Part shown: positions 2,970-43,867 of the stretch, one piece after another
How the letters are laid out: each line of letters begins with the position of its first letter
Numbering within the stretch: position 1 is the stretch's first letter
Assembly: GCF_000143415.4 (NCBI RefSeq)
Contig: NW_003314387.1
Location: 186,001-250,000, forward strand
Length of the DNA stretch: 64,000 nt
Direction: 5' to 3'
Origin: Selaginella moellendorffii
Taxonomy: Eukaryota; Plantae; Lycopodiophyta
Made by a program: the position numbers and the translations under genes
Notes under the pieces: model-generated
Told to the model about the DNA's origin: nothing
Database searches by the model: none
The model's input: only the letters and a program-made list of their open reading frames with translations

Positions 2970-5115
2970 CTGAGCCTTCAGATTGGACAATTACTAACTA
3001 TATGAAGTGGACATGTGAAATTCTTTGGCGACAAAGCTGCCAATTTATAGTCAAAGATTGTTCAAAAAGAACTCGACTTCTTTGACTTACTGTGGCACAC
3101 GATTATCACGTCTTGATCATGGCGACGAATTTTCAAAGGCAACTCCAACATTCCATGAGTGTTCAATTTTCTCTTCTTTCTTCTTGTTCCTTTTCTACAT
3201 AAGTTTTTTATTTAAGCAAGCCATGATCAACGTAGTAAAAGCCTGTGAATGTGAAGCTCAAATTGGGAACTAATGGTTTGATTTAGGGCATTTCCAGGGA
3301 TTGGTCACTCTCATTCACATGCAATCGAAAGCACTTTCCTATACTATATAATAACGTTTTCTTCTTGGGTTACATATTCTTAACATGATTACTAAAACAC
3401 TAAAAACAACTTAAAGAGAAAGTAACAAGTATGACTTGCATGTTGTCAAATAGCTCAAGCTCACTATAAAAATATTATGACTAATTCTATCAAAGATTAT
3501 TCATATGACAATGATTATATGATTGCATATGTGAGTATTATATATTTACACATGTGTGATTTATTTTATTTTGTTTTGAGTTGCAAAAATATTATGCACA
3601 CAATCACTTTTTGATTGCTATAATAGCAATTGAAAACTTGATTGTCTGTATAATATTTACATGCCATGTATGTATGGGGCATGACATGGCATGTCATTCC
3701 ATACAAAGTGATGTCACCAAGAATACATTGAGAGCAGATTTTGAGCATGCAATTGGGCAGTGGTGCAGTGGTGTTGTACCAGAAGGGGTTGAAGAAGAGC
3801 TTGATGGTGGCTGGGAGCACAGCAAGCTCCAGGTTGTTAACCACAAGTCACTTGAACTTGTACTTGTATCCTAGGGAGATCTTAGTACAGCTCAAGGAGC
3901 ACCAAAGGCCTATATTGTGTCTAGTGCATTGGAAGATCTTTCCTTAGATGGCGACTGAGTAAGATCTTTGTCAGTGAGACACTATTGAAAGCATGATAGT
4001 TTTTACCACCACCACCATAATCACTACCAGGATGAGAGCTTGGACTAGAACTCAAGTCATCAGAATTCCAAAGGTGGTGGTGGTTCCCATAGAGTTTACT
4101 ATGAAGAGAGCTTGGACTATAGCTTGAGCAAATGTGACAGTAGGAAAGATGAGAGCATGTTAGAGGTCAACCACTTGATAAGTTATCTGGAAGTTGAGGA
4201 AGTTATTGAGAACTTTGGGATCAATCTCAAGCCTCTTAACTTGGGGGTTGTCAGATGGCACAATCTGTTTCATTCGAGAGCATCCAAACTTCCAGCCGTT
4301 GCTCTAGACTCCAAGGATGATTTCTTTTCCAGGACTGTCACTGAGTCTCATACAATTGTTGGTTTCTGTTTATCTCAATTGCTTACTGCACTTGTAAATA
4401 TGTAGCAACAAAAGAGAGACCTTTGTCTGGAGGCGCCAACCAGTCAAACTGCATGGCTTGCCAGCTCTTGTGAGACTCAGGACTGCCAAAGCTTAAGCAT
4501 TTCTCCATGAAGAAGTATGAAACAGCTGGTGAAGATTTTATTAATTCTACTCCATGCACATTTATTGAAAGATTGTCAGATGAAGAATTCAAAAGAGCCC
4601 AACCTTGAGTCTATTTTTTAATTCTTAGCCAAGTTTTACCACCCTCATTTCTTTTTGTGTTTATGCAAGTGAGAGCCATTCTCCTCTTTTCATATGGATA
4701 GTTTGGTACTGCCAGCAAGAAGGCAATTGTCCAATATGGGAAGATTGACCATGTGGCTTCATTTCCTTTTCTTTTAAAAATGCACTAAATGGTTTGTCAA
4801 GGTTTGTTGAGTGCAAAAAGTGTGGAACAGAAGCTTTCACTATATGTTTGTGGAGATCCATACATCTAACGAGAGATTGTATGCACTATCTAGAGCAAGG
4901 TAAATGGCAGTCTTTTTTTTTTCTCACTCAACATTTTATTTGCAGATAAAACAAATAAAAATGTATTTGTTGATTGCATCAAAGATTGATTTCCATTGCA
5001 TGGTATGATGTAACATATATGTTTTTCACCCTTTACCCTATAGTGATTTATTATAGATGGAGCCTTGGCCATATGTTCAAGAGCAACAGAGCAAAACCCA
5101 AGGTTTAGAGCCTTG

Positions 5116-6809
5116 TGTAAGCGACTAAATTTTCCATTCTATTTTAGTCACTTAACCACACTTCTGACCACTTGGAGGAGTCTCATTCACAACCTCTATA
5201 AGTCCAATTCAGGACTTGGGACTTGCTAGCCCCGAGAATGCCATCCATGCCACCCAACATTTGCACTTGGTCCAAGTGCTCCACGTGTCCGATCCCATGA
5301 CCGACACTCAAAGGTACCACCGACATGGCAGCTTGTCACGCTAAGGCCATGCCTAATCACCTTTACCACACTAGTAGTCCAATACCACATGCATCCCAGT
5401 CTTGGCTCTCCAAGACTAGGCAAACCATCCGTGAGTGGTCATCTCAGATCCACTCCTTAGCATCCTTAGGATGCCCACCGACAAGGGGAATAGCCTTCCC
5501 CAATATCCCTCTGTCAGTCCCCACTAAGTCCCTTTCTGCCCCTGGCCGTGTTTGCCAACACTGTCACTGGATCGAGGCCCACAGGCCCGACCACTAAGTC
5601 CCATGGTCCTCTGGGACTTCCTCACCATACGACTGTGTCCTTGGTCACTACCCCAGAGGACTGCTTCTCTTCCTTTCCACAGTCTGGGCCTTTGGGGACA
5701 ACATTTCGGAACACCATGGCCTCACGTGAGCCTCCTGGGTACTCTCCCCACCTTCCGCCCTTGGGTGCTCTAGCCATGGGCTTAGAGCGAGGTTCTGTTG
5801 AGCCACGCCTGGTATCCAAGTAGGTAGTGCCACCCACACTTGGACTGGGAGCATCGGCCAGTCGATCTCCCGGGGGAACTAGAGCCGGCTCTTGAACATT
5901 TCACCAAGCTACCCCGCTTGTCGGTCCATGTTCACTCTAGTCTTGGACTTCCCAGTGGTCAGCTCATCACCCAACACTGGGTCTAGCCTTCCTAGGCCAA
6001 ACTAGCCTTTCCTGGCCAAACTGGCTCCACTGTAGTCCTCCCCCTTTACTATACTTTTGGAGCTCACCAAACCCCCTAGGGTCTGGGAGACGAACACTTT
6101 GGGCTTTCACCCTCTCAGACTCGGACTCGGACTCAGACTCGGACTCGGACTCGGACTCGGACTCAGGCTTGGGCTCGGTCTCAGCCTTGGCCTCGGTCTC
6201 GGTCTTGGTCTCAGTCCCAGTCCCGGTCTCGGTCTCGGTCTCGGTCTCGGTCCTGGTCTCGGTCTCGATCTCGGACTCCATCTCGGGTCCTTCTCGGACT
6301 CCATCTTGGACTCCATCTCGGACTCCATCTCGGGTCCATCTCGGACTCCGTCTCGGTCCACCTCGGACTCCATCTTGGACTCCATCTCGGGTCCATCTCG
6401 GACTCCATCTCGGGTCCATCTCGGACTCCATCTCGGGTCCATCTCGGACTCCGTCTCGGTCCACCTCGAACTCCATCTCGGACTCCATCTCGGGTCCATC
6501 TCGGACTCCATCTCGGACTCCATCTCGGGTCCATCTCAGACTCCGTCTTGGTCCGTCTCAGACTCCATCTCGGACACTTCCACGTGTCATGTGTTGGTCC
6601 CTTTTGGGTCCCTTTTTGGAGCCTTGCTTATTTCTCGCTTCGTGTTCGCTCCTTGAGCACTTTGTTGGGAGTTCCACTCCCGCTCTCGACCTTCCAAGTC
6701 AGAGCTTTTAGTCTAAATGTGTTACACTCGTTTGGGTTTTTGCTTTGGCCACTACTATGTGACACCCTTTCCGGCTCCACTTTGGGGCCTAGGGATTTTG
6801 TGTCTCACA
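5116..6809 (-). repeat. 3' LTR of element A
   Basis: TGTAAGCGACT...GTCTCACA; direct repeat of 10805-12471. Confidence 0.95.
6114..6575. repeat. LTR-internal minisatellite: (TCGGAC)n/(TCGGTC)n followed by TCCATCTCGGAC / TCCATCTCGGG 12- and 9-mer units
   Basis: Directly visible. Equivalent arrays of different length lie at 11809-12237 and 38003-38581. Confidence 0.95.
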
Positions 6810-6810
6810 A

Positions 6811-6822
6811 CTCCACCACCCA
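6811..6822 (-). promoter_or_regulatory. Polypurine tract of element A
   Basis: Minus strand reads TGGGTGGTGGAG, one base before the TG of the 3' LTR. Confidence 0.7.
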
Positions 6823-7930
6823 TAAACGAAGTTTGATGTCCTCATCGAACGGTAAACCATTTTATAAAGTAACACCCGCATGTGTTACCATTTCCATCCT
6901 TGGCACCTAGCTAATATTTGTCAATGGTTTGACATTGAAGGCTCACCATGCCTTCTCCATATTTGTCAATGGTTTGACACCAAAGGCTCACCATGCCTTG
7001 CCCATCCTCTAAGGAGGATAGTCTCTCCAACTTAGAGACTCACTTGACCACTTGGGGTGGGTTGCTCCTTTTTATTGGTTCAGTCCTCGCTAAACCTGTT
7101 AAAGACACCCTCTCTAACTCAATTCCACTACTCATTTTTGAGTAGTCCCAGATTCCATTAATCTACCTTTGCACTTTGGAACGTTTACTTTTGACTTCTT
7201 GAAGTCAATTTCCTAGGTGTCTCTGACACCTTGCTTTGCACATTTTGTGCAACTCCACTTCCCCTCCTAGGAAGTTCTCTACTCGAGGGCACCCTCATCC
7301 TCTTTTCTATTTTTGTGCCCCTATTAGCATTACGTTCCATTCATCATTATTTGTGCTAGGGCTGTCCACGGCCCTATCTTTTGGCTACTTAGTTGCTTCC
7401 TCACTTGGAGCCTTTCCTTTGCCAAATTGGAGCACTTGGGAATCCATCCTTAGAAGTCCACTTCTTTTTCCGCAATCCGTTAGCATCAACCACATTAGTG
7501 TTCCTTGGCTAACTTTGCCACTTGGATTCTTTCCAATGGATTCCACGGCCCTATCATGGGCACTCGTCTTTTGCTCCTATCCTTGGATTGTTGCACCAAG
7601 CAACATAGGATCATTACTTCCATTTTTGAGGTTTCCTTTCAGTTCCATAGCAAACATTTTGCTTTGCCAAGTCCAAAGGGTGTTCACCCCTAGTACGTCT
7701 GTTTAACATTTTCTGTCGTGAGCTCTATCCACGGCCCAACTTTTTGAGACCCTCCCTTGGATCTTTTATAGAGACTACTTTCCTTGGACTTACTATGCTA
7801 TAGCATTGACATAGCTCATTTCCCTTAGATGTTCTTCCCACTTGGTCACCTCAACCTAGTGATCTTATCTTAACCCCTTAATAGGTCTATCAATAGGGAC
7901 TAGGTCTTCCAGACCCTTCTAAGTTGTTGA

Positions 7931-8539
7931 CTATGACCCCGGGGGCATCCCCCACACTTGGCAGTGCGCCCAAGCCAGCCCTTCCGGCCAAGGATCCATA
8001 GCAACTAAGACTGGGTGTCCCCATCTCATTCACCACGTTCTTGGTGCCCTTTGCACCAAAGTGTTCAAGTTAGATATGCCGAGCTTTCACTCTAAGCAAT
8101 CTAACCATGCATCACGACTCCGAAGCATCCCTCGTTTGGTGGTGTGCCCAAACCAGTCTCCACACTGAGAGTCCATGACCACCGAAAAATGAGTGTCCTC
8201 ATATTCCAAACCATCACCACGCCCTAGTGAGTTGGGACTCGAACCCAAGCACTAGAGGGTCGGGACTCGAACCCAACCTCCGTATATGCATCTACGGACG
8301 GCATCCCTCAGGATGCCTGGCGTGACTCTCCACGCTGGTGCACCAACTTTTACTCAAAGCGCGCTATAGATCACAGCTTAGGAACTTAGTTCCTCCGCAC
8401 TGCCAAGTCCTCTCACTTGACAAGTCTGTGATCATGCATGGACTCTTCCATGCTTGGCCCCATGGCCCACCCCTTTTGAAGTTATCACCTTCAACTAGGG
8501 TATTTGTTCCCCTGACTTGCCAATCTCACTTGGCAAGTC
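7931..8539 (-). ncRNA. Putative structured cis-acting RNA cassette of the LTR element: two cloverleaf domains, two tRNA T-arm mimics and a hairpin array
   Basis: About 15 short perfect or near-perfect stems. Compensatory changes between the two internal domains. Substitutions versus copy B (40179-40784) are biased to loops. G-U pairs work on the minus (element-sense) strand. Confidence 0.7.
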
Positions 8540-10790
8540 TTCCGACCACTGTAACATGGTTCCTGCATAAGCGTGAAAGCCCTTGATCATCGACTTTCGT
8601 TCAAAGCCCTCTCTTTGAACACTCAGGAACTATTTCCTTAACCTTAATAGCTTTGCCTCATGGCAAGCTTCAAGACCACGCTTCTGCTGCGCCACTCTGA
8701 TTTCACGCTTTCCTTGAACCATTTACGCTTGGCCTTTCTAGGTACTAAGCTACCTAGAATCGTCTTTGGGAACCTTGAAGGAACTCTGTCCCTTAGCTTG
8801 CTAAGGCCTCCCTTTTTGCAAGCTTTCCAATTACCATATAGTCTAATATGAACAATTCCATATTTTAGATTTTTTATGGCATCACGGTTGCTAGCGGCAA
8901 CACCCTTGAGCCCCCACTTGATTCTCCACTCCCAGCTGGCATAACCAACCTTGGTTATGCCCTTCGATTCCTATGATTCGGTTCTACCCCCTTACTTCTT
9001 GCTTTTGGCTTCACACCTTTGGTCATTCTCCTCTAGACCAGGAGGATAGCTTTACACTTTCTATCATGCCTTAGCAAGTATTCTTAGGGATGAACTTACC
9101 TGATAGCCTAGGGAGTGGTTCCTCAATCCAGGTATGCTCACCCTATAATCCCACACACCGAGATTACGTTTTTGCTTATGGGCCTTTACATGCCCATCGC
9201 TCGCCTTGCCAAAATTCCATTTTTGGCTTTGTCCAATTCGAGTAGACAGACTTCTCCTGTCTCCGCCACCTTGGACATTTGGATAGCACCTTCTATCCAT
9301 CATTCGCTAGGGACTTAGTCCCTTGGGCCTTATCTATTTCCCTCGCGACATCAAACACCACCTCCTGGTGTTCTAGAGTGTTCGGGTGTCCCAATGACGG
9401 CTTCCTTGACAATGAGTATTTCCTTTCATGACATTGACTTACTATATCACAACATAAGCAACTTATCCCCCGTAAGGGTATATTCAATTTCCTTATGCCA
9501 TTAAGAAGGCTTGGGTAGCTACCTTCTACCCATTTAACCAATTATTTTGCACCTCTTGCTTAGTTGCCTCATAGATGTCAAATCCTACAACTCATTGCTG
9601 GTGCTTCCACACCTCCATCATTATCTGGGTCACCACACTCCAACTGCATGCTCTGAAGTTTAGGTTATGCCATTCCCATTTCCATTGGGATTCCTTTGGC
9701 AAGGGGTTCTCATGAACCCACCAACATAGCCTCAAGGTATCACACCTTGGCACATTTGGTGTCTCCACACCATCGGCTCTACGAGCCTACCTCTATGACA
9801 CTTCTTCTTTGTGTCTAAGTCTTTTGCTAAGACGAATACCACTCTTTCTCATGCCAACCATCCATTAGCACTGCACCATAGAGGTCACACACAACTTTGT
9901 TTCAAAGTTGTTTTCTTTTGGGAACACCCTTCCCACGACTTTAGCATGGCACATTTTGCCATCGATGAGATACCCTCTGTTTTCATCCTTGGATCCTATG
10001 ATCCACCCCCATCCTTCGTGGGGTACCACACACTTTAGTCTAAATGCTTCTATTAGTCCTTTAGGACCATTCCTTGACTCTACTTGAGTCATCCAGCAGT
10101 TTTGGACTTGGTTAATCCACAGACCCGTAAGGTCCTACTTGTCGAGCACTAGCTCACTGGAATACACTTCTTGCATTCATGTTCTCACTCACAAGGACTA
10201 TTTTCACAAGTGTTACTCTGACACTTGATTTTGTTCTCTGGGGCAACCTTTGCCCCTTATGACTACTTGTCCATGTGATGAGAATACCAACACTTCTCTA
10301 AGTACACCCCCCAACTCCTTGGGTTGTTCCAGCATTTATTAAAGGTAGCCCCGGCTACCATTTCAAAGACTTGAGTCCTCTTCTGTATTTGACCTCCCAT
10401 AGTCATTACTTCTGGTCTCACATTCATGAGCACCATATGAGGATAATCTTGTGACTCCTTTATTGCTTTGGAGTCTTTATCTTTCCCGTGATCCCAACTA
10501 TAGTTGTTTATCACAACTACATTAGCCCGTTTGTTGTGTCAAACACTCATTTGGATCACATCCTCAACTCTCTAAAGAAACCTTATACTGTTCCCAATAT
10601 CCCAAAGTCGTTCCATTATTGGCCCTTTTCTATCCACCACATTGTGCCCAAGTTCACGCATGAACTTGAGTGGAGAGCCATGTCCTCTCGACATGCTACT
10701 CCTCAAGGATAAGCCCACTCCTAGGACCTTCCGATGCCAACATCAATGGTGATATACTTGAGCACCAATAAAAGTCGGACTAAGGAACAA

Positions 10791-10801
10791 CTCCGATACC
10801 A
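10791..10801 (-). promoter_or_regulatory. Primer-binding site (tRNA-iMet type) of element A
   Basis: Minus strand TGGTATCGGAG, 3 nt after the CA of the 5' LTR. The canonical plant iMet PBS is TGGTATCAGAGC. Confidence 0.88.
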
Positions 10802-10804
10802 AGT

Positions 10805-12471
10805 TGTAAGAAACTAAATTTTCCATTCTACTTTAGTCACTTAACCACACCTCTGACCACTTGGAGGAGTCTCATTCACAACCTCCATAAGTCCAATTCA
10901 GGACTTGGGACTTGCTAGCCCCGAGAATGGCATCCATGCCACCCAACATTTGCACTTGGTCCAAGTGCTCCACGTGTCCGATCCTATGACCGACACTCAA
11001 AGGTACCACTGACATGGCAGCTTGTCACGCTAAGGCCATGCCTAATCACCTTTGCCACACTAGTAGTCCAATACCACATGCATCCCAGTCTTGGCTCTCC
11101 AAGACTAGGCAAACCATCCGTGAGTGGTCATCTCAGATCCACTCCTTAGCATCCTTAGGATGCCCACCGACAAGGGGAATAGCCTTCCCCAATATCCCTC
11201 TGTCAGTCCCCACTAAGTCCCTTTCTGCCCCTAGCCGTGTTTGCCAACACTGTCACTGGATTGAGGCCCACAGGCCCGACCACTAAGTCCCATGGTCCTC
11301 TGGGACTTCCTCACCATACGACTGTGTCCTTGGTCACTACCCCAGAGGACTGCTTCTCTTCCTTTCCATAGTCTGGGCCTTTGGGGACAACATTTCGGAA
11401 CACCATGGCCTCACGTGAGCCTCCTGGGTACTCTCCCCACCTTCCGCCCTTGGGTGCTCTAGCCATGGGCTTAGAGCGAGGTTCCGTTGAGCCACGCCTG
11501 GTATCCAAGTAGGTAGTGCCACCCACACTTGGACTGGGAGCATCGGCCAGTCGATCTCCCAGGGGAACTAGAGCTGGCTCTTGAACACTTCACCAAGCTA
11601 CCCTGCTTGTCGGTCCATGTTCACTCTAGTCTTGGACTTCCCAGTGGTTAGCTCATCACCCAACACTGGGTCTGGCCTTCCTGGGCCAAACTGGCCTTTT
11701 CTGGCCAAACTGGCTCCACTGCAGTCCTCCCCCTTTACTATACTTTTGGAGCTCACCAAACCCCCCAGGGTCTGGGAGACGAACGCTTTGGGCTTTCACC
11801 CTCTCAAACTCGGACTCAGACTCGGACTCGGACTCGGACTCGGACTCAGGCTCGGGCTCGGTCTCAGCCTTGGCCTCGGTCTCGGTCTCGGTCCCGGTCT
11901 TGGTCCCGGTCTCGGTCTCGGTCTCGGTCCCGGTCTCGGTCTTGACCTCGGACTCCATCTTGGGTCCTTCTCGAACTCCATCTTGGGCTCCGTCTCAGTC
12001 CATCTCGGACTCCATCTCAGGTCCATCTCGGACTCTGTCTCGGTCCACCTCGGACTCCATCTCAGGTCCATCTCGGACTCCATCTCGGGTCCATCTCGGA
12101 CTCCGTCTCGGTCCACCTTGGACTCCTTCTCGGACTCCATCTCGGGTCCATCTCGGACTCCATTTCGGGTCCATCTCGGACTCCGTCTCGGTCCATCTCG
12201 GACTCCGTCTTGGTCCGTCTCGGACTCCATCTCGAACACTTCCACGTGTCATGTGTTGGTCCCTTTTGGATCCCTTTTTGGAGCCTTGGTTATTGCTCGC
12301 TTCGTGCTCGCTCCTTGAGCACTTTGTTGGGAGTTCCACTCCCGCTCTCGACCTTCCAAGTCAGAGCTTTTAGTCCAAACGTGTTACACTCGTTTGGGCT
12401 TTCGCTTTGGCCACTACTACATGGCACCCTTTCCGGCTCCACTTTGGGGCCTAGGGATTTTGTGTCTCACA
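10805..12471 (-). repeat. 5' LTR of element A
   Basis: TGTAAG...GTCTCACA followed by the CCTTG TSD. Confidence 0.95.
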
Positions 12472-12566
12472 CCTTGGACCTTTAAATAAAAAGATGAAGC
12501 CAAACTCTTAAGCATAAAGCCAAAGAGCAAAGGAAGTGGAGTATGATATGATTTATGAGTGTACAA

Positions 12567-12680
12567 CCCAAGGAGTGAAAGAATAGAAGTTTGGAACGAC
12601 TTCTAAGCATATAGCCCAAGGAGTGAAAGAGCAAGAGTTTAGAACAACTTCTAAACGTATAGCCCAAGGAATGAATAAGC
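12567..12680. repeat. 48-bp tandem repeat, about 2.5 copies
   Basis: CCCAAGGA(G/A)TGAA recurs at 12567, 12615 and 12663. Confidence 0.75.
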
Positions 12681-12774
12681 AAAAGCACAGAGTAATAAAA
12701 AAATAATTCTAGAGCATCTAGCATCGTAATGCTAGGACTAGCATGAAAAATAGAGCCAAATGGAATTTAGCACA

Positions 12775-13027
12775 ATTTTAGTATACTAGTGACTTAATGT
12801 GAGGATATAAGTATAAAGTTTAGGATTAAACCTAAGTTGGACACAAACTAAATACAGATACACAAATAGGAACTTGAGGAGCACTTTTAGCTTTCACCCC
12901 AATCCCAGGAGTTAATCTTTAGAACAATTATGAAAATTTATTAAATATAGAATAGTGCTAGATTGGGAATTTAGACATAAAAACAACCCCATCGTGTTTA
13001 AGACAATTTCTACATTCCATAAATATG
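12775..13027 (-). mobile_element. Old interspersed repeat fragment, homologous (inverted) to 36640-36983
   Basis: Its reverse complement TCTAAATTCCCAATCTAGCACTATTCTATATTTAATAA...GATTGGGGTGAAAGC aligns with 36693 TCTAAATTCCCAATGTAACGCTATTCTATATTTAGTAA...GATTGGGGTGAAAGC. Confidence 0.7.
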
Positions 13028-13204
13028 CCTTACTCACTAATCTAGACACTTTCCATAAATAGCAATTGGAAAAGAACAGAACTAACATATGGGACATGAT
13101 AATGAGGGTGTTTGGTGAACATGATAAGTTATTATATAGCAATATTAAAGAATTAGTCTCAATAGGCAAGGGTTTTGTCAAGTTAGTGCAAAATGAACCA
13201 AAAA

Positions 13205-13423
13205 AAAATTAAGAGTCAAGCTGAGTATGCTCAACAACAAACACATAAAAGTTTCTACTTTATATTTATTTGGCTAAGTATAGATACTAAACTTAGTTTA
13301 CTAACACTTAACAAAAGGGGCTGAAAAGGGGACAAACAATATCAATCTCTTACTATCATGGGAATAAATCTGAAAAAATTTACTAACATATGATTTTCGA
13401 TACCCATAATCACACTCATAACA
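13205..13423. mobile_element. Old LTR fragment homologous to 35485-35702
   Basis: Shared blocks TGCTCAACAA..GTTTCTACTTTAT..TACTATCAT..TACCCATAATCACA. Confidence 0.6.
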
Positions 13424-14533
13424 TGTGACTTCATTGCCTCCATTGCATGATTGTTATAAAATCACTGATCTATGAGAGATTCTCATGGATTTTAACTTCA
13501 ATTGGCAAGAAAGAGTGTCTCTTCATTAACCTAAGTTGCTATCACTTGAGATCCTTTTGGTATGATACCATTGCCTACTAAGGAGAAGATTGATGGAAAC
13601 CTTCTAATTCTTCTAGTCTTTTTTATCTATCTCATTGAGCTTGGATTTTGAGCATGTGATGGATAGTGGCGCAGTAGTGCCATATCAAGAGCAGGTGTTA
13701 AGGAGTTCAATTGATTGATGGAGGGATATGGTTGGAGATGTTTCTGCCAAGGATAAGCTCCTCCAAATGGGGATCTTGCTTAATACACAACACAATGCAC
13801 AACAGCTATTCAAGACTTCAGAAGAAATTTGTAGAGAGGTTAAACTTCTTGAGTAATGTGCAAGGATCAATTTTCTCCATGAGTAAAATTAAGGTGAGAT
13901 TGAACTCCTCAAACACCAAAGCTTAAACCATGGCAAAATAACCTGACATGGATTATGGCACATGAAGTGGCACTAATGTCACATGCATGCCAATATATAC
14001 ATACCTTGAAAAAAGAATCGTGTCCAAACATTATATTATGAGTCACATATATGTTTAAACAATTGAATCATATATATGTTTTAAATTTATTTATCTTGCA
14101 ATACATTATAATTTTTTGCCATGCCACACACCCAGATACACCTCGCCCCAAAATTTACAATCACATATTGCTTGCTATATATTCAACACAAAAATATATA
14201 TATCACTATACTATTGACTACTGTTTGGCAATATTATTCCAAGGACTTCAAAAGCATGCCATTATAAGATCTCTCATTGGAATTAAACAGAATTCCTTTG
14301 CAATTACTTCAAGCCCACAACTTCTTGCATCCATGCAAGCATGTAAAGGAGCAAGATCAATTATAAGCAACCATGCAAAGTTTATTATCAAAGCTAACAC
14401 TTAAAGCATATATTAAAATTGTATTGCATAACTAAAAGAATCGATAATATACTTTTTTAGAATTTCTTGAACCAAAATGGCAAGCTTAGTTTACAGTCTT
14501 TCTTGCAAATGAGAGAAAAAAGGCGTTATACAG

Positions 14534-14824
<291 letters not shown>

Positions 14825-14924
14825 NNNNNNNNNNNNNNNNNNNNNNNNNNNNNNNNNNNNNNNNNNNNNNNNNNNNNNNNNNNNNNNNNNNNNNNNNNNN
14901 NNNNNNNNNNNNNNNNNNNNNNNN
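14825..14924. other. Assembly gap (100 N)
   Basis: Run of N. Confidence 1.
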
Positions 14925-15044
14925 TAAGCATATATATAAATGGTTATGCATATCTAAAAGTATGGATCATATGCTTTCTTTGATTTTCTTGAACCAAAAT
15001 ACAAAGCTTAGTTTACATACTTTTTTGCAAATGAGAGAAAAAAA

Positions 15045-15114
<70 letters not shown>

Positions 15115-15479
15115 CTAACTAGCATAATCTAGTTTTTTAACCAATACTTACTTATATTTTTAAGTATGTTATGAATGATATACTTAGGTTTTCACTTAAA
15201 CATGAAGAAGAGCTTAAACATGAGCTCATTGAAATTTTATCTACCATGGTAAAGGCCTTACACTACAAATATCATTATTTATGGAATGGTTGGATTTGAG
15301 AGACATATCTATGTGTTGCAAATCACATTTTCCATCCACTCAAATTAATCAATAAATTTATAGACCAATTGAGTCTCCGCTCAATATAATCCAATACACC
15401 AAAGCAATAAACTATGATATTGATCTCTAAGGCAAAGAAACTTCACCAACACTAGATCACCTACTTGATGAGCTATGTT

Positions 15480-15840
15480 ATGCATTGTAAGTCCGTTCTT
15501 GATACTTTTGTGCTCTTACCAAAAACTCTAATGATTGTGTAGACAATGTTAATAACACTTAGTCTAAATACTCTAACCATGTTTTCCCCTCCGGATACCT
15601 TGGAGTGATCAGCATCAAACCCATAACAGGAAGCAAGACAAACTCCCACCCAAATAACGTGCTAGACTGAGAGATGCTAGTGGACTTCTGTGGCAGTGAA
15701 ACATAAGCAAGTTGCAATTAGAATTAGTATTACATACTTCACAATCATGCCTTCTGAGTGTCTAATTCACTTGCTTAACCAAGCCATTTGTCAGTCTTAG
15801 GATGATACTAGGAGAAATTAGGCATATAACGCCAAGTGTG
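15480..15840 (-). pseudogene. Degenerate LTR-retrotransposon (Ty3/gypsy-type) integrase remnant
   Basis: Across frameshifts: LGVI..S*YHPKT/NGLVKQVN*TLR..LQLAYVSLPQKSTSISQSSTLFGWEFVLLP..RAQKYQERTYN. This matches the YHPQTxGxxER..AY..ST..P..LFG..LP..AQxxQK pattern. Confidence 0.75.
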
Positions 15841-16354
15841 CTCTATTAATGTCAAATTGAATTTCTTTATTTTCAGCACAACCTGGAGCATGAACGATAT
15901 GGCCTTTTTGGCCAAATCAACCATCAGTGAGTAATATGAAGCTTTTTTTCTCTTTAATACAAATCCAATTGATGGACAAACCTGAACCTGAAAAAAAACA
16001 TGAACGTGTTACATGGAACTAAAGTACTCTTTATACTCTAGAAGTGTTAAGTGTAAGTTCCAAGGGTCTAAGTAATAAAATTAATGTTAAACAGTGATTT
16101 ACTTTAGGGAATATCTTAAATGATACCTGAATATGCTAGGTATATTCTTTACACCCGCAGATTAGGGTTCTTGACGAGGAGGAGCTACATTTCTGGGGAT
16201 CTTGTCAGGCAAGCGATCGGTTGTTTAGGAGCTAGCGAGCGTGGCTCCAGCGGGATTGAAGTTCCAGCATTTTGGTGCCGTGAAAAGATGATCGACAAGC
16301 TTCCCCGGTGGTAGAAGCGCTCTAGCAGGGAAAATCTTACGCTAGTTGGATTGG

Positions 16355-18189
16355 ATGGCTCGGCCAGCTCAGGTGATAATAGACGAAGACGACGACGACG
16401 AAGATGGGGATTTGCTTGTAGACTGGAAAGCATCGTCTTCTTCCATCCTTGCGAGTGCCTCTGCCAGCATTGCCATTGCTACCACCACCGCCACCACCGC
16501 CACTAGAACATTGAAAAGTTCTTGTGGTCTTTTTTCTGGAGGAACCAGCGTGAGCAATGTGTTGTGTTTGGATTCGGACTCGGATGGATCGGTCCCCATT
16601 GCTGTTGTTCTAGGCACGCAGACCAGCTCCGTGGATGATCCTCGAGAAATCAAAAGAAGAAAGCTGGAGCAAGAGAAAGAAGCTCGAAAGGAGGAACGAG
16701 CTGCGAGGAAGCAGGCAAAGGAAGCTGAGAAGCAAAGGCTGAAGGAGGAAAAGCGGCAAAAAAAAGAGGTATGATCTCTCTCGGTTCTTCTTCGCGAAGG
16801 TTCATTTTCTTCTTCTGCTGCCTAGGCCGAAAGATTGGAGAAGGCAAGAGCTAAGGAGAAAGCAGCGCAAGTACGAACGCAGGAGCAGCAAAAGGCGAAA
16901 TGGGAGAAAGGCAAGTTCTCGGCTGAGAACACTGTTGCGATAATCGATTGCAAGGTCGCAGAGAATGGACTGATTGGAGGCAAGTGCTGTTCTAGTTTTT
17001 TCTATGGTCTAATTGCTTACTGTTTCGATCGCACAGGCCAGTTGCTGAATCGTCTCGCTGGTAAAGAGCTGAAGTTCTCGCTCAGCTCGAATCCAATATC
17101 GGGGAGTATCATCTGGAAAACAAAGAGGCTAGCAGAGAGTTTTGACACGGAAAATGACGAGATAGAGGTGATCAATAACAATGTGTCTTGTGCTGGACTG
17201 ATCTTGCCTTGCAGCTCGAGGAAGTCGACGTGCCTTACGTCCTTCTCGTGTTTGGAGCGGAAGAATTCTCATCACTGCTTTGCCAAGGCTCGCTGGATGT
17301 ACACGTTCGTCGAGTCCAGGCACAGTATCCTGGATTTACCGTGTGTTATCTCGTCAACAAGCTCCACTGGTACTTGCAGAAGAAGTAAGTTTTCATGTCT
17401 CCTCGTTCGCAGGTTCTATAGTTTACACGCACAGAGATCAAGAGCAGTTTAAACGCGGAGAAAGTGAATGGCTCCGGCCAAACGCAGACAAGGTGCCTGA
17501 TTTCTATTCATCTTCTCTTGTTGGTTTTCATTAGTTTGTTTCCAGGCGCTGGCGGAGCTCGTGACAAACTACTGTGGAGTACATTCTCGCCTGTGTATCG
17601 ATGAAGCTGAAGTGGCGGATCATGTCATCGCTCTCACGCGGAGCTTGATAGAATGTCCTTACAAGTGATGAGCCACCAATTCTTTCGCTCTTGACGTAAC
17701 CACGACTTCTTTCTTGGGACGCAGGCAAAGGCTCACGTCTCTTTCTGTGAGCAAGAATGGAGATCATGTCGTGGACAAGGATCCCAACAAGGAAGTGATC
17801 AAGAAGAGCAGCTGGTATGGGGAATGAGAATCATTCAAGTTTGGACCTATCTTTGGTTGCAGGCTGAAAACTCTGGTTGCGATTCCAAAGGTTTCCGGAG
17901 CGGCTGCAATCGCGATATCCAAACGCTATCCTTCGTTTCGTTCGCTCTTGAACGCCTACATGGATCCTTCAATGACAGTTGAGTTCTAGCTTTTTTGAGT
18001 TTTTAACGCTTTGGCCAGGTGCATGACAAGGAACTTTTGCTTCAAGACCTGGAGAAGGAGGGAGCTGACAGCCGAAGGCGTGTCGGTCCAGCGTGCTCGA
18101 GACGAATCTACCGAATTCTCATGGCTCAAAATGGCGATCTTAAAACGGAGGATGTGGAAACCGGAGCGGATCAATTTGATTGCGAGTGA
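16355..18189 (+). CDS. EME1: Crossover junction endonuclease EME1 (multi-exon; start codon uncertain)
   Basis: E/K-rich coiled coil, KAKWEKGKFS, and C-terminal WLKTLVAIPKV..YPSFRSLLNAYMDP..VHDKELLLQDL..GPACSRRIYRILMAQNGDLKTEDVETGA typical of plant EME1. Short GT-AG introns. Confidence 0.88.
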
Positions 18190-18305
18190 GAAACCACTCA
18201 ACAAGGTTTGATATTGTCCTTAACTTTAACAGCTCTGGACATGATTTTGCAGCTAGGATCAAAGTAATCTAACAGCAAACTCTGGTTACGAAACGAAACG
18301 AAGTT

Positions 18306-19127
18306 TCATCCAAGCAAAACACTCAAGTCCTTGTATATTTTTTCAGCAACTTCATCCCGGTTTTTCTTGTCAAGTGTGAGAACTGCTACCCCCGGAAAGC
18401 TCACGACCTTCTCCACTGCAAGATGTAAGAAACAGTCATGCATTTCCCATTCTTTACGAAACTTCGCAATACCTTCTTTGGATGAATGTTTGATAGGAAC
18501 CGAGCCTAAGATCACAGCATTACGACGCTGTAGCAATGCTTCCACGGCAGGAAAAAACTTTGGGCTGAAGAGCTCCATCTTGCCAACTTCGTCGATCACA
18601 AAAAGCTGGGTGTCTTCCAGTGGCTGCGAAACGCAAAAGCATGACAAACTGTGAAGTTCTACCGCAGCATATATTTACCTCTAGCTCGGGCAATGCGAGA
18701 GCTTCAAAGCCAGGAACATTCACCTTGTATCGTCCCACCATAGGAAGCCGGCTACATTGTAAAAATCAGATTTTTACACGAACAAGTTCTCGAGATACCC
18801 TGGAGAATTGATCGAAGCTAGCATTTCCTTGCGTCCTCCATTAAAAGCGATGACTTCGAATCCAACTCTCTCGCCCTCCTTTCTCACTTCCTCTAAATCA
18901 CAAAGAGATGAGCAATCTTTGATTTTGTGTCAAGGAATTTTTTTCTTACTGGTATAGAAGCCTTGAACTTTGAGGTTTGGATGCGTAGCCCTGAGTTTCT
19001 CCACTACCTTGACGATAAGAGTGGTCTTTCCAATTCCCTGCCAAGCCCGAGGATCAATATGATTTTCAAGCAAAACTTTGTGATTTACCGGAGACCCTGT
19101 GACAAAGAAACTGCGACCAGCAGCCAT
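18306..19127 (-). CDS. NTPCR: NTPase_1 / THEP1-family (cancer-related) nucleoside triphosphatase, multi-exon
   Basis: FFVTGSP|GIGKTTL Walker A, GFYT|EEVR..GERVGF, VGRYKVNV, and LFVIDEVGKMELFS Walker B. Confidence 0.9.
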
Positions 19128-20446: not shown

Positions 20447-23400
20447 ATGAAGAACTTGGAGGTTTTGCGAGAGAGGCATTCGCGGCTGGAGCTCGGCGAT
20501 GAGAAGATCGTCGCGGCGGCAGTCGACAGCGGGCACGATCGCGCCTTCTTTCTCTCGAATGGCGGCAATCTCCACTGGGAAGATGAGGTATGTCGGTTCA
20601 ATCCGAAATATTTTGCCAATCGTGGATCGTCTTCTTCGTTCTTGATCAGCTCTCGCGGCATTCGCTGTCCCTGGCGAGTGCCATCGAGTTCGACGCCGGC
20701 GTGGTCGGGATGGAATTCCTGCTGGAGCTGGAAGCGCTGGTCATTGGCATGGAGAGCGGTGATCTGGTACTGGTTGAGCCACGGTCTAGCAGCGCCATAG
20801 AAGTTATTGGCTCGCTCCAGGGAGGGATTCTTAGTCTCGCTGCTAGTCCGGATGGGGAACTGTTAGCTATAGTATCAGGACTCGGGCAGATCTTACTCAT
20901 GACTCCAGCAAACTGGGACACTGTCCACGAGTTTTCGATCAAAAACAACGATCGCCAGGAATTTTCTAGTAGCGCTGTGGAACTCTCGTGGCGGGCTGAC
21001 GGGAAGTACTTTGCTACAAGCGAATACAATGCTCAAGAAAGCAGCAGTGTCGTGAAGATCTGGGAAAGAGAAACGGGCAAACTCCATTCGAGCTGTGAAG
21101 CATTGCCATCGACGCATCGCTCGAGCATCTGCTGGAGTCCGAGTGGTGCTCGAATTGCTGCCAGCACTTCCAAGGCAGACCAGGCTCCCAGTGTGACGAT
21201 CTTCGAGCGGAATGGTCTGAAAAAAGATTATTTCCAGGTTACTGCTCCTGCCGGTGCTCGTGTAGAAAGTCTGCAGTGGGATTCCAGCGGAGAAGTCATG
21301 AAGATGGTTGTCAGGTGTGATGGCTGGGACGCGATCCAGTTCTGGTACTGCAGCAACTATCACTGGTACTTGAAACAGGAATGGCGCTACACGTCCAAAG
21401 AGACCGTGAGCACAGTGTGGCACCCAGAGAAGCCTCTCAGTGCCATGGTTTGGACTGTCTTGGGCAACATCAAAGCTACCACTTTGGGTTGGAAGTCGGC
21501 TGTGCTGGACTCTTCGGTGGCGCTGGTTATTGATGGCCCGAGTCTTTTGGTCACACCATTGGCTGTCTGTATGACTCCGCCACCTTTGTACTTCTCCAAG
21601 GTACGATTCCCCGCACCTGTGAATACCGTGACACTTACGAGCGAGTCTTCTGGTTTTACCACCGTTGCAGCCAGTTTATCAGACAAAAGTTTTGGCCTTG
21701 CTGTTCTCGCAACTAGTGACGGCTGGAATGATCTGGAAGACAGTGAAGTTGTGGGATACATATTGCAGAACTTCGATGGTGGTGTGAGGAACCTGATTTC
21801 TACGGGAGCGAACAGGTTTTGTGGACTCCTAGACAGCTCGAGCGGTCACGGTTCGTTACAGTTTACTGAGTTCGAGGCTACAGATTCTGGAGAAGGATGG
21901 ACTTCGCGTTCTCTTTCTCTAGTCTATTTGGACAAGCCGCTCATAGCAGCGGCGAGAAGTCCCCTTACAGAGAGCTCGCAGGCTTTTCTACAGCTAAATG
22001 ACGGATCGATCCTGAACCATTGCGCTGGAGAGCTTACTCCGGTTGGAAAGTTTCCAGTTGCATGTCCGTGGATGCAAGCTTTTGAAGATAAGGGACAGGT
22101 GCAGTTCGTCGGCCTTGACGAACGCGGCCAGCTCCATTTTCGTAATTCCGTCATCAGCAGCGAGTGCACCGGGTTTGCACTCCACATCACATCCACAAAA
22201 GCGAGGCCAAGCGTCGTTCACTTGGTTTATACAACAAGGCAAGACTTGCTCCACATTATCCCTCTCGGCAGCAGCAACTTCACGTCTTCTCCTCCGGAAG
22301 TACTAGACGTTGGTAGCGGTAAACGGCAACCAGCGCCGAAGGATTTCAACATTCAGCGTGTTTGGGAGAGGGGAGCCAGGATAGTTTCTACGCTAGGTGG
22401 CAGCGACGTTGCGGTCATCATGCAACCCAGCCGTGGGAATCTCGAAACCATTTATCCACGGGGATTGATACTTCACGCTGTCGAAGCGGCACTAGCTGAG
22501 CAAGACTTTGCAGAAGCTATCACCTGCGCGCGGCGGCACAGGATTGATCTAAACGTCATCGTGGACTTCCTTGGTGAGAAGGAGTTTTCCCGTTTGGCCC
22601 CGGACTTTGTCAAGCAAGTCGGCAAACTTAGCCTTGTCACGGAGCTGGTTAGCTGCCTGGGAAACGAGAACGTTTTGGAAACGACGTACAAGAAGACATT
22701 GTCTACGCTGAATCCGGAGGACAGGATGGTCCCGGCGGTTTCATCCAACAAGATGCAAGTGGTATTAGAAGCGCTGAGAAGTGCTGTCGAAAATCACGTA
22801 ACAGATAGTCCATCTCGAGAGATGTGCCTGCTGACTATTCTTGCTCGAAACGATCCGCCTTTGCTCGAAGAGGCGTTGAAACGCATCAAGCTACTACGTG
22901 AAGGAGAGCTTGGTCTCGGGACTTCAGATGATGAGGAGGCTCTGGAAGCAATTGAGTCACAGGGAAAACTTGTGGCGGAGAGCGCTCTAAAGCACCTGAT
23001 ATGGCTCGCGGACGCCGACGCGGTGTTTGATGCGGCGCTGGGACTTTACGACTTGCATCTAGCTGCAATGGTGGCGTCTCACTCCCAGCGAGATCCTAAA
23101 GAGTTCCTTCCTTTCCTTCAGGAGCTAGAAGACATGCCACCCTCCATAATGTGCTACAAGATCGACTGCAAGCTAAAACGATATGCAAGTGCACTGCGAC
23201 ACCTTTCGAGCGCCGGGGAGACGTATTTCAACGAGGCACTCGATCACGTCCAAAGTCATCCGGAGCTCTTCTCTCTCGCACTCTCCATCTTTACAGGCGA
23301 GAGCCAAAGGTCGTCTATTATGGAGGCTTGGGGAGAATACTTCCTTTCTCAGGAAAGGTTTGAGGATGCAGCTATCACTTTCAGGTCCTGCTCGCAGCTC

Positions 23401-24349
23401 CACAAGGCTTTAGCTGCGTACCGTGCTGGCGGTCACTGGCAGGGTGTGCTCATGGTTGCTGGCCAGTTGAGCATGACACCGGACGAGATCACCAACCTTG
23501 CACTAGAGCTCCGAGAAGAACTCCAAGCAATGGGACAGCCAAAAGAAGCTGCGAGAGTAGCTCTGGATTATTGTAAGGACGTCAAGGATGCTGTCGGCCT
23601 TTTGATCGAGGCAAGGGACTGGATGGAAGTCCTTCGGCTGTGCTACCTTCATGCTCAGCCCGATATCGTGGATACTATAGTACAGCCAGCTGCTGTGGAG
23701 TGCGCAAATGGATTGGTTGGTCAGTTCCAGGAGGGCGTCGAGAAAGTCGGGAAGTATTGTGCTCGATTTGTTGCGGTACATCAGCGCAGGGTACTGCTGG
23801 AAGCGAAGATAAAATCGGATCAAGGAGAAGACCGTTTCGACGACGACACCGCATCAGAGGCTAGTAGCAACTTGAGTGGGATGAGTGTTTATACACGCGG
23901 GTACGTTTGCTGATCTTTTTTACTTCTTTTTGCCATCTTAACTTTGAGGTTGTGTCAGGACTGCAAGAACAGCAGCGACAGGAAGAACCCGAGCCAGACG
24001 CCAAGGCAAAGTTCGAGCAGGGAGGTAAAAGGAACTTATGCTACTTCGTTTCGATTCTAACCTACCTCTTGTTTTTTTAAGTCCTGGAGAAGAGCTTGCT
24101 CTAGTGGAGCACCTTAAGAACATGGCTATAAGTCCGCAGCTGGCAGACGAGCTCAGGCCTCTGCTACAAATCCTTGTCTTCGTAAAGCGTGAAGACTTGT
24201 CGTGCAAACTCCAGCAAGCCGCATCAAAATTCCAAGCCACTCAAGCGGAGGCCATGCGAGCAGTTGAAGAAAATGGCATTACCGTCGACAAGACAGCAGC
24301 AAACAGGGTGGTAAACTGGTCCTATCAAGCCTTGGAAAGGGTCTTATAA
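20447..24349 (+). CDS. ELP1: Elongator complex protein 1 (IKI3/ELO2), multi-exon
   Basis: MKNL start, WRADGKYFA, FERNGL, NYHWYLKQE, QPSRGNLETIYPR, ARRHRIDLN, ALGLYDL..SQRDPKEFLPFL, C-terminal RAG|SPGEELALVEHL. Confidence 0.95.
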
Positions 24350-39300: not shown

Positions 39301-39523
39301 TCATCACTTATGCCAGGGCTGTCCACAGCCCTATCCTTTGGCCACTTTGCCGCTCCTCACTTGGAGCTTTTACTTCGCCAAATTGGAACACTTGGGAATT
39401 TATCTTTGGAAGTCCACTTCCTTTCCCGCAATCCGTTAGCATCAAACACATTAGTGTTCTTTGGCTAACTTTGCCATTTGGATTCCTCCCATTAAATTCT
39501 ATGGCCTAAACTTGGCCACTAGC

Positions 39524-40178: not shown

Positions 40179-40784
40179 CCATGACCCCGGGGGCATCCCC
40201 CACACTTGGCGGTGCACCCAAGACAGCCCTTCCGACCAAGGGTCCATAGCAACTGAGACTGGGTGTCCCCATTTCATTCACCACGTCTTTGGTGCCACTC
40301 GCACCAAAGTGTTTAAGTTAGATATGCCAAGCCACACTAAGCAATCTAACCATGTATCACGACTCCGAGGCATCCCTCGCTTGGTAGTGTGCCCAAACCA
40401 GTCTCCTCACTGAGAGTCCATGACCACCAAAAAATGAGTGTCCTTGTATTCCAAACCATCACCACGCCCTAATAATTTGGGACTCGAACCCAAGCACTAG
40501 AGGGTCGGGACTCGAACCCAACCTCCGTATATGCATCTACGGACGGCATCACCCAGGATGCCTGGTGTGACTCCCCACGCCGGTGCACCAACTTATACTC
40601 AAAGCGCGCTATAGATCACAGCTTAGGAACCTAGTTCCTCCACACTGCCAAGTCTTCTCACTTGACACGTCTGTGATCATGCATGGACTCCTCCATGCTT
40701 GGCCCCATGGCCCACCCTTTTTGAAGTTATCACCTTCAACTAGGGTATTTGTTCCCCTGACTTGCCAATCTCGCTTGGCAAGTC
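40179..40784 (-). ncRNA. Structured RNA cassette, copy B
   Basis: Homolog of 7931-8539 with stems retained and loops changed. B-box cores at 40479-40491 and 40507-40519. Confidence 0.7.
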
Positions 40785-43700: not shown

Positions 43701-43867
43701 CCACCTTCCGCCTTTGGGTGCTCTAGCTATGGGTTTAGAGCGAGGTTCCGTTGAGCCACGCTAGGTATCCAAGTAGGTAGTGCCACCCACACTTAGACTG
43801 GGAGCATCGGACAATCGATCTCCCGGGGGAACTAGAGCCAGCTCTTGAACACTTTTATACATATACA

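What the first reader, a model, noticed from the sequence alone, without database searches (positions are those of the whole stretch)
7931..8225. Two diverged cloverleaf RNA domains with compensatory base changes inside the LTR element
Seen on the minus (element-sense) strand: a ~100-nt module occurs twice (~8025-7931 and ~8205-8112) with modest sequence identity but the same fold. Lead hairpin: TGGG-GACA-CCCA versus TGAG-GACA-CTCA. Closing stem: CTATG.GATCC/GGGTC.ATAG versus TCATG.GACTC/GAGTC.GTGA. Three inner arms: TGGCC-GGAAG-GGCTG versus TCAGT-GTGGAG-ACTGG; CTTGG-8nt-CCAAG versus TTTGG-8nt-CCAAA; GGGG-GATG-CCCC versus CGAGG-GATG-CTTCG. Several pairs switch G-C to A-T on both sides. The spacer has two more stems (TTGGTGC/GCACCAA and GTTAGAT/ATCTAAC) whose loops differ in copy B while the stems do not. 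Inference: a selected four-way-junction RNA element, such as a packaging signal, tRNA mimic, translation element or ribozyme-like fold. I do not recognise it as a known family.
Basis: partly seen in the sequence, partly recalled or inferred. Interest (0 to 1): 0.88.

Follow-up and report, generated by a model that had tools for sequence, protein, structure and literature searches.

The report
Duplicated cloverleaf RNA in Selaginella LARD
A protein-less but very abundant jumping gene (probably of the spikemoss Selaginella moellendorffii) carries two diverged copies of a ~70-base four-armed RNA fold that stayed foldable through matching base changes. It looks like a selected signal in the element's RNA, but its function is untested and it is one part of a much larger hairpin-rich region.

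Summary
On the minus strand, 8221-8116 and 8037-7935 are a true diverged direct repeat (55% identical in the core). Each copy alone folds into the same ~70-nt four-way junction. That shape occurs in about 1% of dinucleotide shuffles. RNAalifold recovers it from a plain MAFFT alignment, with 5 pairs changed on both sides (column-shuffle z -3.8, 0 of 500; SCI 0.85).

In a read pile-up of thousands of family contigs, listed variants avoid paired bases (8 of 23 against 61% expected, P 0.009), and 7 of those 8 keep the pair.

Limits:
- Folding energy of a single module is no better than shuffles (z -0.2 to -2.4).
- Only four sequences could be aligned.
- The lead hairpin is broken in one copy.
- The outer stem has a competing partner.

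Context: a 7.4-kb non-coding LARD-type LTR retrotransposon with TSD CAAGG and an iMet-type PBS. Its whole 2.9-kb upstream interior is unusually structured (mean z about -2.7, against -0.3 in host DNA).

There is no Rfam, tRNA or ribozyme match.

Best reading: a selected cis-acting RNA module used for mobilisation in trans. The mechanism is inferred.

Other first-stage notes of this scan describe the same duplicated cloverleaf on other pieces of this genome, and a single copy in a chromovirus 3' UTR. None of these notes is checked.

The parts
5116..12471 (-). Element A: complete non-autonomous (LARD-type) LTR retrotransposon, sense on the minus strand, flanked by the 5-bp target-site duplication CAAGG (12472-12476 and 5111-5115).
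   Evidence: LTR pair 93.3% identical. TG..CA ends and TSD read. No ORF over 83 aa on the sense strand of the interior. No Pfam hit for 10 ORF pieces.
10805..12471 (-). 5' LTR of element A
10791..10801 (-). Primer-binding site TGGTATCGGAG (tRNA-iMet type), two bases after the 5' LTR. The same 11 bases open the internal part of Helenus-1_SMo.
   Evidence: Helenus-1_SMo sequence in the supplement of PMC10886601
5116..6809 (-). 3' LTR of element A, preceded by a G-rich tract (6810-6820) in the place of the polypurine tract
7900..10804 (-). Hairpin-rich non-coding internal domain. Mean z of 200-nt windows is about -2.7 on both strands.
   Evidence: against host-DNA control z -0.28 +/- 1.2
8112..8221 (-). 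Module M2: conserved block CGTGGTGA, lead hairpin (8189-8202, loop GACA) and cloverleaf core (8112-8178)
8041..8105 (-). Spacer with two hairpins (GTTAGAT/ATCTAAC at 8069-8105; TTGGTGC/GCACCAA at 8041-8059). Loops and apical part vary in copy B and in the family; stems are kept.
7931..8037 (-). Module M1: conserved block CGTGGTGA, lead hairpin (8009-8025, loop GACA) and cloverleaf core (7931-8001)
40179..40466 (-). The same two modules in element B (cores 40179-40249 and 40357-40423). Element B spans 36984-43854, has a truncated 5' LTR and carries a 204-bp insertion at 39520-39724.

Best explanation
The two modules are a diverged direct repeat inside the non-coding interior of an abundant LARD-type LTR retrotransposon, probably of Selaginella moellendorffii. 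In the element-sense RNA each repeat folds into a ~70-nt four-way junction, preceded by a small GACA-loop hairpin.

The fold has been kept by selection in the lineages that gave rise to new copies, while individual inserted copies decay. The most likely role is a cis-acting signal in the genomic RNA. A protein-less element must keep such a signal to be recognised in trans by the Gag/nucleocapsid or reverse-transcription machinery of an autonomous partner, for packaging, dimerisation or both. The two copies would give two binding sites.

Shown: the element's anatomy, the repeat, the common fold, the paired changes, the stem-sparing variation and the strand specificity.

Inferred: selection at the RNA level, and above all the function.
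For: - Element anatomy: LTRs, TSD, PBS and no coding capacity.
- Real repeat.
- Same fold from independent MFE predictions, a shape seen in about 1% of shuffles.
- Cross-mapped pairs: 27/29 and 25/31 standard, with 4-5 double changes, P 0.0002-0.003.
- RNAalifold recovers the fold from a sequence alignment; z -3.8, SCI 0.85. 96.9% of cells are paired, against 37-50% when partners are slid.
- The family is very abundant: 16,539 contigs laid in one run. Listed variants fall in paired bases 8 of 23 times against 61% expected (P 0.009), and 7 of 8 keep the pair.
- About 18% of paired cells are G-U, and the plus strand does not form the fold.
- One 2,580-nt contig joins an LTR end directly to 8522 and keeps 8522-7921, so this block persists in a shorter variant.
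- The modules are 87-92% identical between copies A and B, against about 86% for the interior.
Against: - Only four sequences (two elements, two modules each) could be aligned, and they form just two deep lineages.
- Single-module energies are not better than shuffles.
- Double transitions always restore a pair, so some paired change is expected without selection.
- The lead hairpin is broken in copy B, and the apical part of spacer hairpin 1 is not kept.
- At 8091, 97% of family depth has a base that breaks the predicted pair.
- The outer closing stem has a competing partner.
- Only the 40 best-supported of 124 variant places were listed.
- The A-B conservation peak lies upstream at 8580-8230, not on the modules.
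- The whole interior is hairpin-rich on both strands, so the modules may share a general property rather than a specific function.
- Known packaging signals usually lie near the 5' end; this lies about 2.6 kb downstream of the PBS.
- Only one RNA-seq read was laid, from a run of which about 12% was read.
Confidence: 0.45

Rival explanations
1. Neutral relic. An old internal duplication of a hairpin-rich sequence, with the shared fold reflecting common ancestry, a transition-biased mutation spectrum and the reader's selection of a good-looking case. It has no function of its own.
For: - Single-module z-scores are not significant.
- There are only two deep lineages.
- The whole interior is equally structured on both strands, so hairpins are the background here.
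- Individual stems are broken in single copies.
- A break at 8091 is carried by 97% of family depth.
Against: - The null that keeps the substitution spectrum is exceeded (P 0.0002-0.003).
- The column-shuffle test gives 0 of 500.
- Variants avoid stems although stems are G+C-rich.
- At 55% identity, neutral drift should have destroyed several of the 25 pairs.
Confidence: 0.25
2. Nuclear export or stability element of the unspliced, non-coding transcript. It would be analogous to the constitutive transport element of simian type D retroviruses (two repeated binding loops) or the multi-stem RTE of mouse IAP elements, which lie in the 3' part of the RNA.
For: - Position in the 3' part of the interior, about 1.1 kb upstream of the 3' LTR.
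- Duplication of a structured module.
- Unchecked notes of this scan place a single copy in a chromovirus 3' UTR.
- The comparison with CTE and RTE rests on my knowledge of the literature, not on a test here.
Against: No sequence or structure match to any Rfam family. No data on RNA localisation. Plant export factors for such elements are not known to me.
Confidence: 0.12
3. Relic of a tiny nested LTR element (TRIM or Helenus-like), or another tRNA-derived sequence. M2 and M1 would be its two LTRs, the ~75-85-nt spacer its interior, and the cloverleaf a decayed tRNA-like part.
For: - The layout of repeat (about 105-115 nt), spacer, repeat resembles Helenus-1_SMo of the same species: LTR 120, interior 85 (PMC10886601).
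- The repeats can be read as starting with TG and ending with CA, with TGG right after M2.
- The core has tRNA size (67-71 nt).
- Two box-B-like motifs GGTTCGAGTCC lie just upstream.
Against: - ARAGORN and the Rfam tRNA model find nothing.
- There is no box B inside the modules.
- A 21-nt probe from the Helenus-1_SMo tRNA-like part has no match with up to 3 mismatches.
- There is no TSD and no real polypurine tract.
- 88% of family depth has C in place of the T of the TGG (8107).
- The arm loops (3-4 and 5-6 nt) are unlike T and D loops.
- Even if true, this explains the origin, not why the fold was kept.
Confidence: 0.08
4. Source of small RNAs. The hairpin-rich interior, the modules included, is processed into siRNA or miRNA-like RNAs. 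Alternatively, tRNA-like parts are cut by RNase P or RNase Z.
For: - Pervasive hairpins on both strands.
- T-arm-like hairpins just upstream give a very weak resemblance to the tRNA-like mascRNA (E 9.9, far below threshold).
Against: - The arms are only 4-6 bp long, too short for Dicer substrates.
- No small-RNA data were examined.
- The Rfam match is not significant and lies outside the modules.
Confidence: 0.05
5. Self-cleaving ribozyme, as in retrozymes.
For: A multi-helix junction in a non-autonomous LTR element. Retrozymes are such elements with hammerhead ribozymes (PMC5680766).
Against: - No hit to any ribozyme family even at E up to 10.
- The junctions have 0-2 unpaired bases and no conserved single-stranded core.
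- The loops vary in the family.
- The modules are in the interior, not in the LTRs.
Confidence: 0.02

Closest known systems
LARD elements (large retrotransposon derivatives, e.g. Sukkula of barley; Kalendar et al. 2004 as cited in PMC7215508)
   Same: Long LTRs, a several-kb interior without gag/pol, high copy number, presumed mobilisation in trans, and an interior said to specify conserved RNA secondary structure.
   Different: The host is a lycophyte, not a grass. No sequence relation was tested. The specific duplicated four-way junction is not described there, as far as I could find.
Retroviral and retroelement cis-acting RNA signals (packaging signal and dimer initiation hairpins; mouse VL30, a non-coding LTR element packaged by MLV, PMC4859993)
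   Same: Structured RNA kept in a protein-less LTR element that depends on a partner's proteins. Repeated stem-loops act as binding sites.
   Different: Those signals lie next to the PBS in the 5' leader; this one lies about 2.6 kb downstream. No binding or packaging data exist. There is no homology.
Constitutive transport element (MPMV) and RTE (mouse IAP)
   Same: A 3'-proximal, internally repeated or multi-stem RNA structure in an unspliced retroelement RNA.
   Different: No match in Rfam. Different architecture (a four-way junction rather than an extended stem with internal loops). Function untested. The comparison is from my knowledge.
Helenus-1_SMo, the tRNA-bearing TRIM of Selaginella moellendorffii (PMC10886601)
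   Same: Same species by the scan's note. Identical PBS start TGGTATCGGAG in element A. Similar size layout of repeat, spacer, repeat around the modules.
   Different: Its LTR holds a recognisable tRNA-like sequence with boxes A and B; the modules do not.

Membership tests
LARD-type non-autonomous LTR retrotransposon | Two long terminal repeats with TG..CA ends and a target-site duplication | tested here: met
   LTRs 1.67-1.69 kb, 93.3% identical, TSD CAAGG
LARD-type non-autonomous LTR retrotransposon | PBS after the 5' LTR and a purine-rich tract before the 3' LTR | tested here: met
   TGGTATCGGAG at 10791-10801. The G-rich tract at 6810-6820 is weaker than a classical PPT.
LARD-type non-autonomous LTR retrotransposon | Interior of several kb without gag, pol or env | tested here: met
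   4-kb interior; longest sense ORF 83 aa; no Pfam family at E up to 1 in 10 ORF pieces. Degenerate remnants below this sensitivity are not excluded.
LARD-type non-autonomous LTR retrotransposon | High copy number of structurally uniform members | tested here: met
   16,539 contigs of one DNA run and 260 of another lie on 7800-8650 at 80% identity or more. Two copies are in the window.
tRNA or tRNA-derived element (SINE head, Helenus LTR) | Detectable by tRNA models | tested here: not met
   ARAGORN found 0 genes in the window. No tRNA hit in Rfam at E up to 10.
tRNA or tRNA-derived element (SINE head, Helenus LTR) | Box A and box B (GGTTCRANNCC) inside the unit | tested here: not met
   Box-B-like motifs occur only at 8235-8245 and 8263-8273, upstream of M2, and at the matching places of copy B.
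Self-cleaving ribozymes (hammerhead of retrozymes, twister, pistol, hatchet and others) | Match to the family covariance model, with a conserved catalytic core | tested here: not met
   No ribozyme family among Rfam matches at E up to 10.
Self-cleaving ribozymes (hammerhead of retrozymes, twister, pistol, hatchet and others) | Self-cleavage in vitro | not testable with these tools
   Needs a transcription and cleavage assay.
Retroelement packaging or dimerisation signal | Binding by Gag/nucleocapsid and requirement for encapsidation | not testable with these tools
   No partner element is in the window. An experiment is needed.
Retroelement packaging or dimerisation signal | Shared between the non-autonomous element and its autonomous partner | not tested
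   Only unchecked first-reader notes say that a chromovirus 3' UTR holds one copy. No chromovirus sequence could be fetched.

The most novel reading that the evidence does not exclude
A new class of tRNA-sized, covarying four-way-junction RNA that an autonomous chromovirus carries once in its 3' UTR and that its protein-less LARD parasite carries twice. It would serve as the handle by which the parasite is recognised for packaging or reverse transcription. It might use a loop contact: the invariant GUGGUG before each module is complementary to the arm-2 loop CAC(C/U)(A/G)C, and part of the family has the palindrome GUGCAC in that loop.
Probability: 0.2. Interest if true: 0.7.

Novelty: new member of a known kind. 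Interest (0 to 1): 0.45.

Why it matters
It is poorly understood how protein-less LTR elements (LARDs, TRIMs) are chosen for packaging and reverse transcription by autonomous partners, especially in plants. A small, defined, duplicated RNA fold that is conserved in a very abundant lycophyte LARD would give a concrete handle for testing this, through binding, packaging and helix-swap mutants. It would also add a family to RNA-structure catalogues, which hold almost nothing for plant retrotransposons. If instead the fold is a by-product of a generally hairpin-rich interior, the finding is ordinary.

Tried and rejected
1. More copies through ORF products. Two searches (82-aa ORF 8338-8586 +, and 156-aa ORF 7236-7706 +) found no protein. 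The third search was not spent.
2. A degenerate module pattern scanned in metagenome contigs gave one hit, in a G+C-rich, apparently bacterial stretch (my reading of the sequence). Model R1 matches only the arm-2 part there (13 bits), so it is spurious.
3. Covariance model R1 found only its four training modules in the 64-kb window.
4. The window holds no autonomous retroelement. The long ORFs are host genes: ELP1, PPR-DYW, RING, GCV_T and an acyltransferase. The chromovirus lead could therefore not be tested.
5. tRNA, ribozyme and other Rfam families: nothing.
6. Peptide coding. Two short sense ORFs (48 and 53 aa) cover the modules, but they read the shared block CGTGGTGA in different frames and have no Pfam hit. 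Rejected.
7. A third module upstream, or a repeat of the spacer downstream: local alignments are not above shuffles (z -0.1 to 1.8).
8. A longer four-sequence MAFFT alignment mis-registers the cores. It was not used for pair counts, so the pseudoknot idea was not counted formally.
9. RNA evidence: one read in about 12% of one RNA-seq run, and one contig from a run only guessed to be RNA. No conclusion on expression.

Full report
**What is there**

The finding lies inside a complete LTR retrotransposon whose sense strand is the minus strand of the window.
- The 5' LTR is 12471-10805 and the 3' LTR is 6809-5116. The two are 93.3% identical.
- Both begin with TG and end with CA. The element is flanked by the 5-bp duplication CAAGG.
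- Two bases after the 5' LTR comes TGGTATCGGAG, a primer-binding site of the initiator-tRNA-Met type.
- The 4-kb interior has no sense ORF longer than 83 aa. Ten ORF pieces gave no Pfam family at E up to 1.
- A second, damaged copy (element B, 36984-43854) is about 86% identical in the interior.

By anatomy this is a LARD-type non-autonomous element. An earlier follow-up note of this scan names the genome as Selaginella moellendorffii. The PPR-DYW and other host genes in the window fit a land plant, but I did not verify the species.

**The observation**

On the minus strand, 8221-8116 (M2) and 8037-7935 (M1) are a genuine diverged direct repeat. The local alignment score is 48.5, against 21.5 +/- 2.8 for shuffles. 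The cores are 55% identical.

Each module starts with the shared block CGTGGTGA. A small hairpin with a GACA loop follows, then a 67-71-nt core. Folded alone, the core gives a 10-bp closing stem with one bulged G and three arms at matching positions. This holds for A-M1, A-M2 and B-M2. In B-M1 the cloverleaf ties with the minimum-energy fold.

The spacer has the two hairpins described. In copy B the loop of the second changes at three of five bases. The apical part of the first changes by two substitutions and a 3-nt deletion. Both basal stems stay identical.

**Is it more than chance?**

Energy alone does not say so. Single modules have z of -0.2 and -0.95, and the cores -0.3 to -2.4. The sequence is G+C-rich and shuffles fold well.

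Four other tests do say so.
1. The closed three-arm shape appears in only 0.7-2.7% of dinucleotide shuffles.
2. I mapped the pairs of one module onto the other through a purely sequence-based alignment.
   - Of M2's 29 pairs, 27 are standard pairs in M1 (16 unchanged, 6 changed on one side, 5 on both). The expectation is 21.2 +/- 1.7 when partner letters are reshuffled with the substitution spectrum kept (P 0.0002; P 0.003 for the double changes).
   - In the other direction 25 of 31 are standard pairs (P 0.003).
3. RNAalifold on the plain MAFFT alignment of the four cores returns the cloverleaf with 5 pairs changed on both sides.
   - Its energy is -23.5, against -12.8 +/- 2.8 for column shuffles (0 of 500).
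   - The structure conservation index is 0.85, against 0.57.
   - With partners slid by one to three columns, only 37-50% of cells pair, against 96.9%.
4. Laying public runs on 7800-8650 shows a very abundant family: 16,539 contigs of one DNA run and 260 of a run of a second organism label.
   - Of the 23 listed variant places in 7931-8221, 8 fall on paired bases although 61% of bases are paired (binomial P 0.009).
   - 7 of those 8 keep a standard pair.
   - Several places where the window copy departs from over 80% of the family are places where the family base makes the stronger pair (7994, 8124).

About 18% of paired cells are G-U. The plus strand does not form the fold. The structure therefore belongs to the sense RNA, not to a DNA palindrome.

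**Weaknesses**

- Only four sequences in two deep lineages could be aligned, so shuffles overstate significance.
- Two transitions on the two sides of a pair always restore it, so some paired change is expected by drift.
- The tool listed only the 40 best-supported of 124 variant places.
- At 8091, 97% of family depth breaks a predicted pair in the spacer hairpin.
- The lead hairpin of M2 is destroyed in copy B.
- With the upstream block included, the 5' half of the outer closing stem can pair instead with CGTGGTGA in an extended lead hairpin of similar energy. The exact model is therefore open.
- A longer alignment that mis-registers the cores gives only z -2.4.

**Context that changes the reading**

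Scanning the interior in 200-nt windows gives z-scores of about -1 to -5 (mean about -2.7) from the PBS down to about 7900, on both strands. Host DNA at 16-36 kb gives -0.28 +/- 1.2. The modules are thus the 3' end of a 2.9-kb hairpin-rich domain, not an isolated oddity.

Their windows do favour the sense strand (-4.2 against -2.3, and -2.6 against -1.4). The A-B identity peak (93-97%) lies just upstream at 8580-8230, and the modules are at 87-92%.

One 2,580-nt contig joins an LTR end directly to position 8522 and keeps 8522-7921, which suggests a shorter variant built around this block. Conserved RNA structure of LARD interiors has been asserted before (PMC7215508, citing Kalendar et al. 2004).

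**What it is not**

- ARAGORN finds no tRNA.
- Rfam gives nothing for the modules even at E 10, in a 4-kb and in a 461-base search. That excludes tRNA, hammerhead and the other catalogued ribozymes at this sensitivity.
- The tRNA-bearing TRIM Helenus-1_SMo of the same species has a similar size layout (LTR 120, interior 85) and the same PBS start (PMC10886601). However, a probe from its tRNA-like part has no match in the window.
- Box-B-like motifs lie only upstream of M2.
- The short ORFs over the modules use different frames.

**Mechanism**

The best-supported reading is a cis-acting RNA module kept by selection in the transposing lineages of a protein-less element. Such an element must be recognised in trans.

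Packaging or dimerisation is my first choice. An export or stability element of the CTE/RTE kind is second. A neutral relic remains a serious rival.

Two things seen by eye and not tested:
- The invariant GUGGUG before each module is complementary to the arm-2 loop CAC(C/U)(A/G)C in all four sequences.
- Copy B, and about 46% of family depth at 7968, have the palindrome GUGCAC in the M1 arm-2 loop. This is the kind of sequence that makes kissing-loop dimers in retroviruses (my knowledge).

**Other notes of the scan, and what could not be done**

Unchecked first-stage notes report the same duplicated cloverleaf in other copies, and a single copy in a chromovirus 3' UTR. I could not test this. 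The window has no autonomous element and no route to further plant sequence worked.

Family variation is described site by site only.

**Verdict**

The function is inferred. It is a new, uncatalogued member of a known kind: cis-acting structured RNA of a non-autonomous LTR retrotransposon.

Noticed in passing
window 8225-8345 (-), and 40470-40590 in copy B: Two tandem T-arm-like hairpins with exact box-B-like motifs GGTTCGAGTCC (8235-8245, 8263-8273) lie directly upstream of M2. There are 4 matches in the window against 0.2 expected. They give a very weak, non-significant resemblance to the tRNA-like mascRNA (E 9.9). This is the subject of another first-stage note (s1-361271).
   Followed up: partly
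window 7900-10804, both strands: The whole non-coding interior of element A folds far better than shuffles: mean z about -2.7 in 200-nt windows, down to -5.1 (minus strand) and -7.8 (plus strand) at 8604-8405. Host DNA gives -0.3. Why a 2.9-kb interior is so rich in hairpins on both strands is unexplained.
   Followed up: partly
window 8522 (junction seen in a run's contig): A 2,580-nt contig of a run guessed to be RNA joins an LTR end (…GCTTACAAC) directly to 8522 through the shared letters TTGG and continues to 7921. This is a shorter family variant lacking 10800-8523 and apparently the PBS.
   Followed up: no
window 7858-7915: Family depth drops about 100-fold here (9,000-19,000 against 1-2 million), and copy B has a gap. 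This stretch just after M1 is nearly private to element A.
   Followed up: no
window 8031-8036 and 8215-8220 with arm-2 loops 7961-7966 and 8139-8144 (-): The invariant GUGGUG before each module is complementary (with G-U) to the loop motif CAC(C/U)(A/G)C of arm 2 in all four sequences, a possible pseudoknot. The M1 loop of copy B reads GUGCAC, a 6-nt palindrome. Seen by eye only.
   Followed up: no
window 5960-6660, 11580-12320, 37980-38600: The LTRs hold long arrays of 11-23-nt tandem repeats (repeat families D2-D5) that create spurious ORFs of up to 330 aa on the antisense strand.
   Followed up: no
window 55257-56624: Four to five tandem copies of a 312-315-bp unit (76-97% identical), unrelated to the element.
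   Followed up: no
window 28635-31775 (-) and 46342-48594 (-): Two long PPR genes, one with a complete E/DYW deaminase end. An ELP1 gene lies at 20590-23913. These are ordinary host genes between the two element copies.
   Followed up: partly
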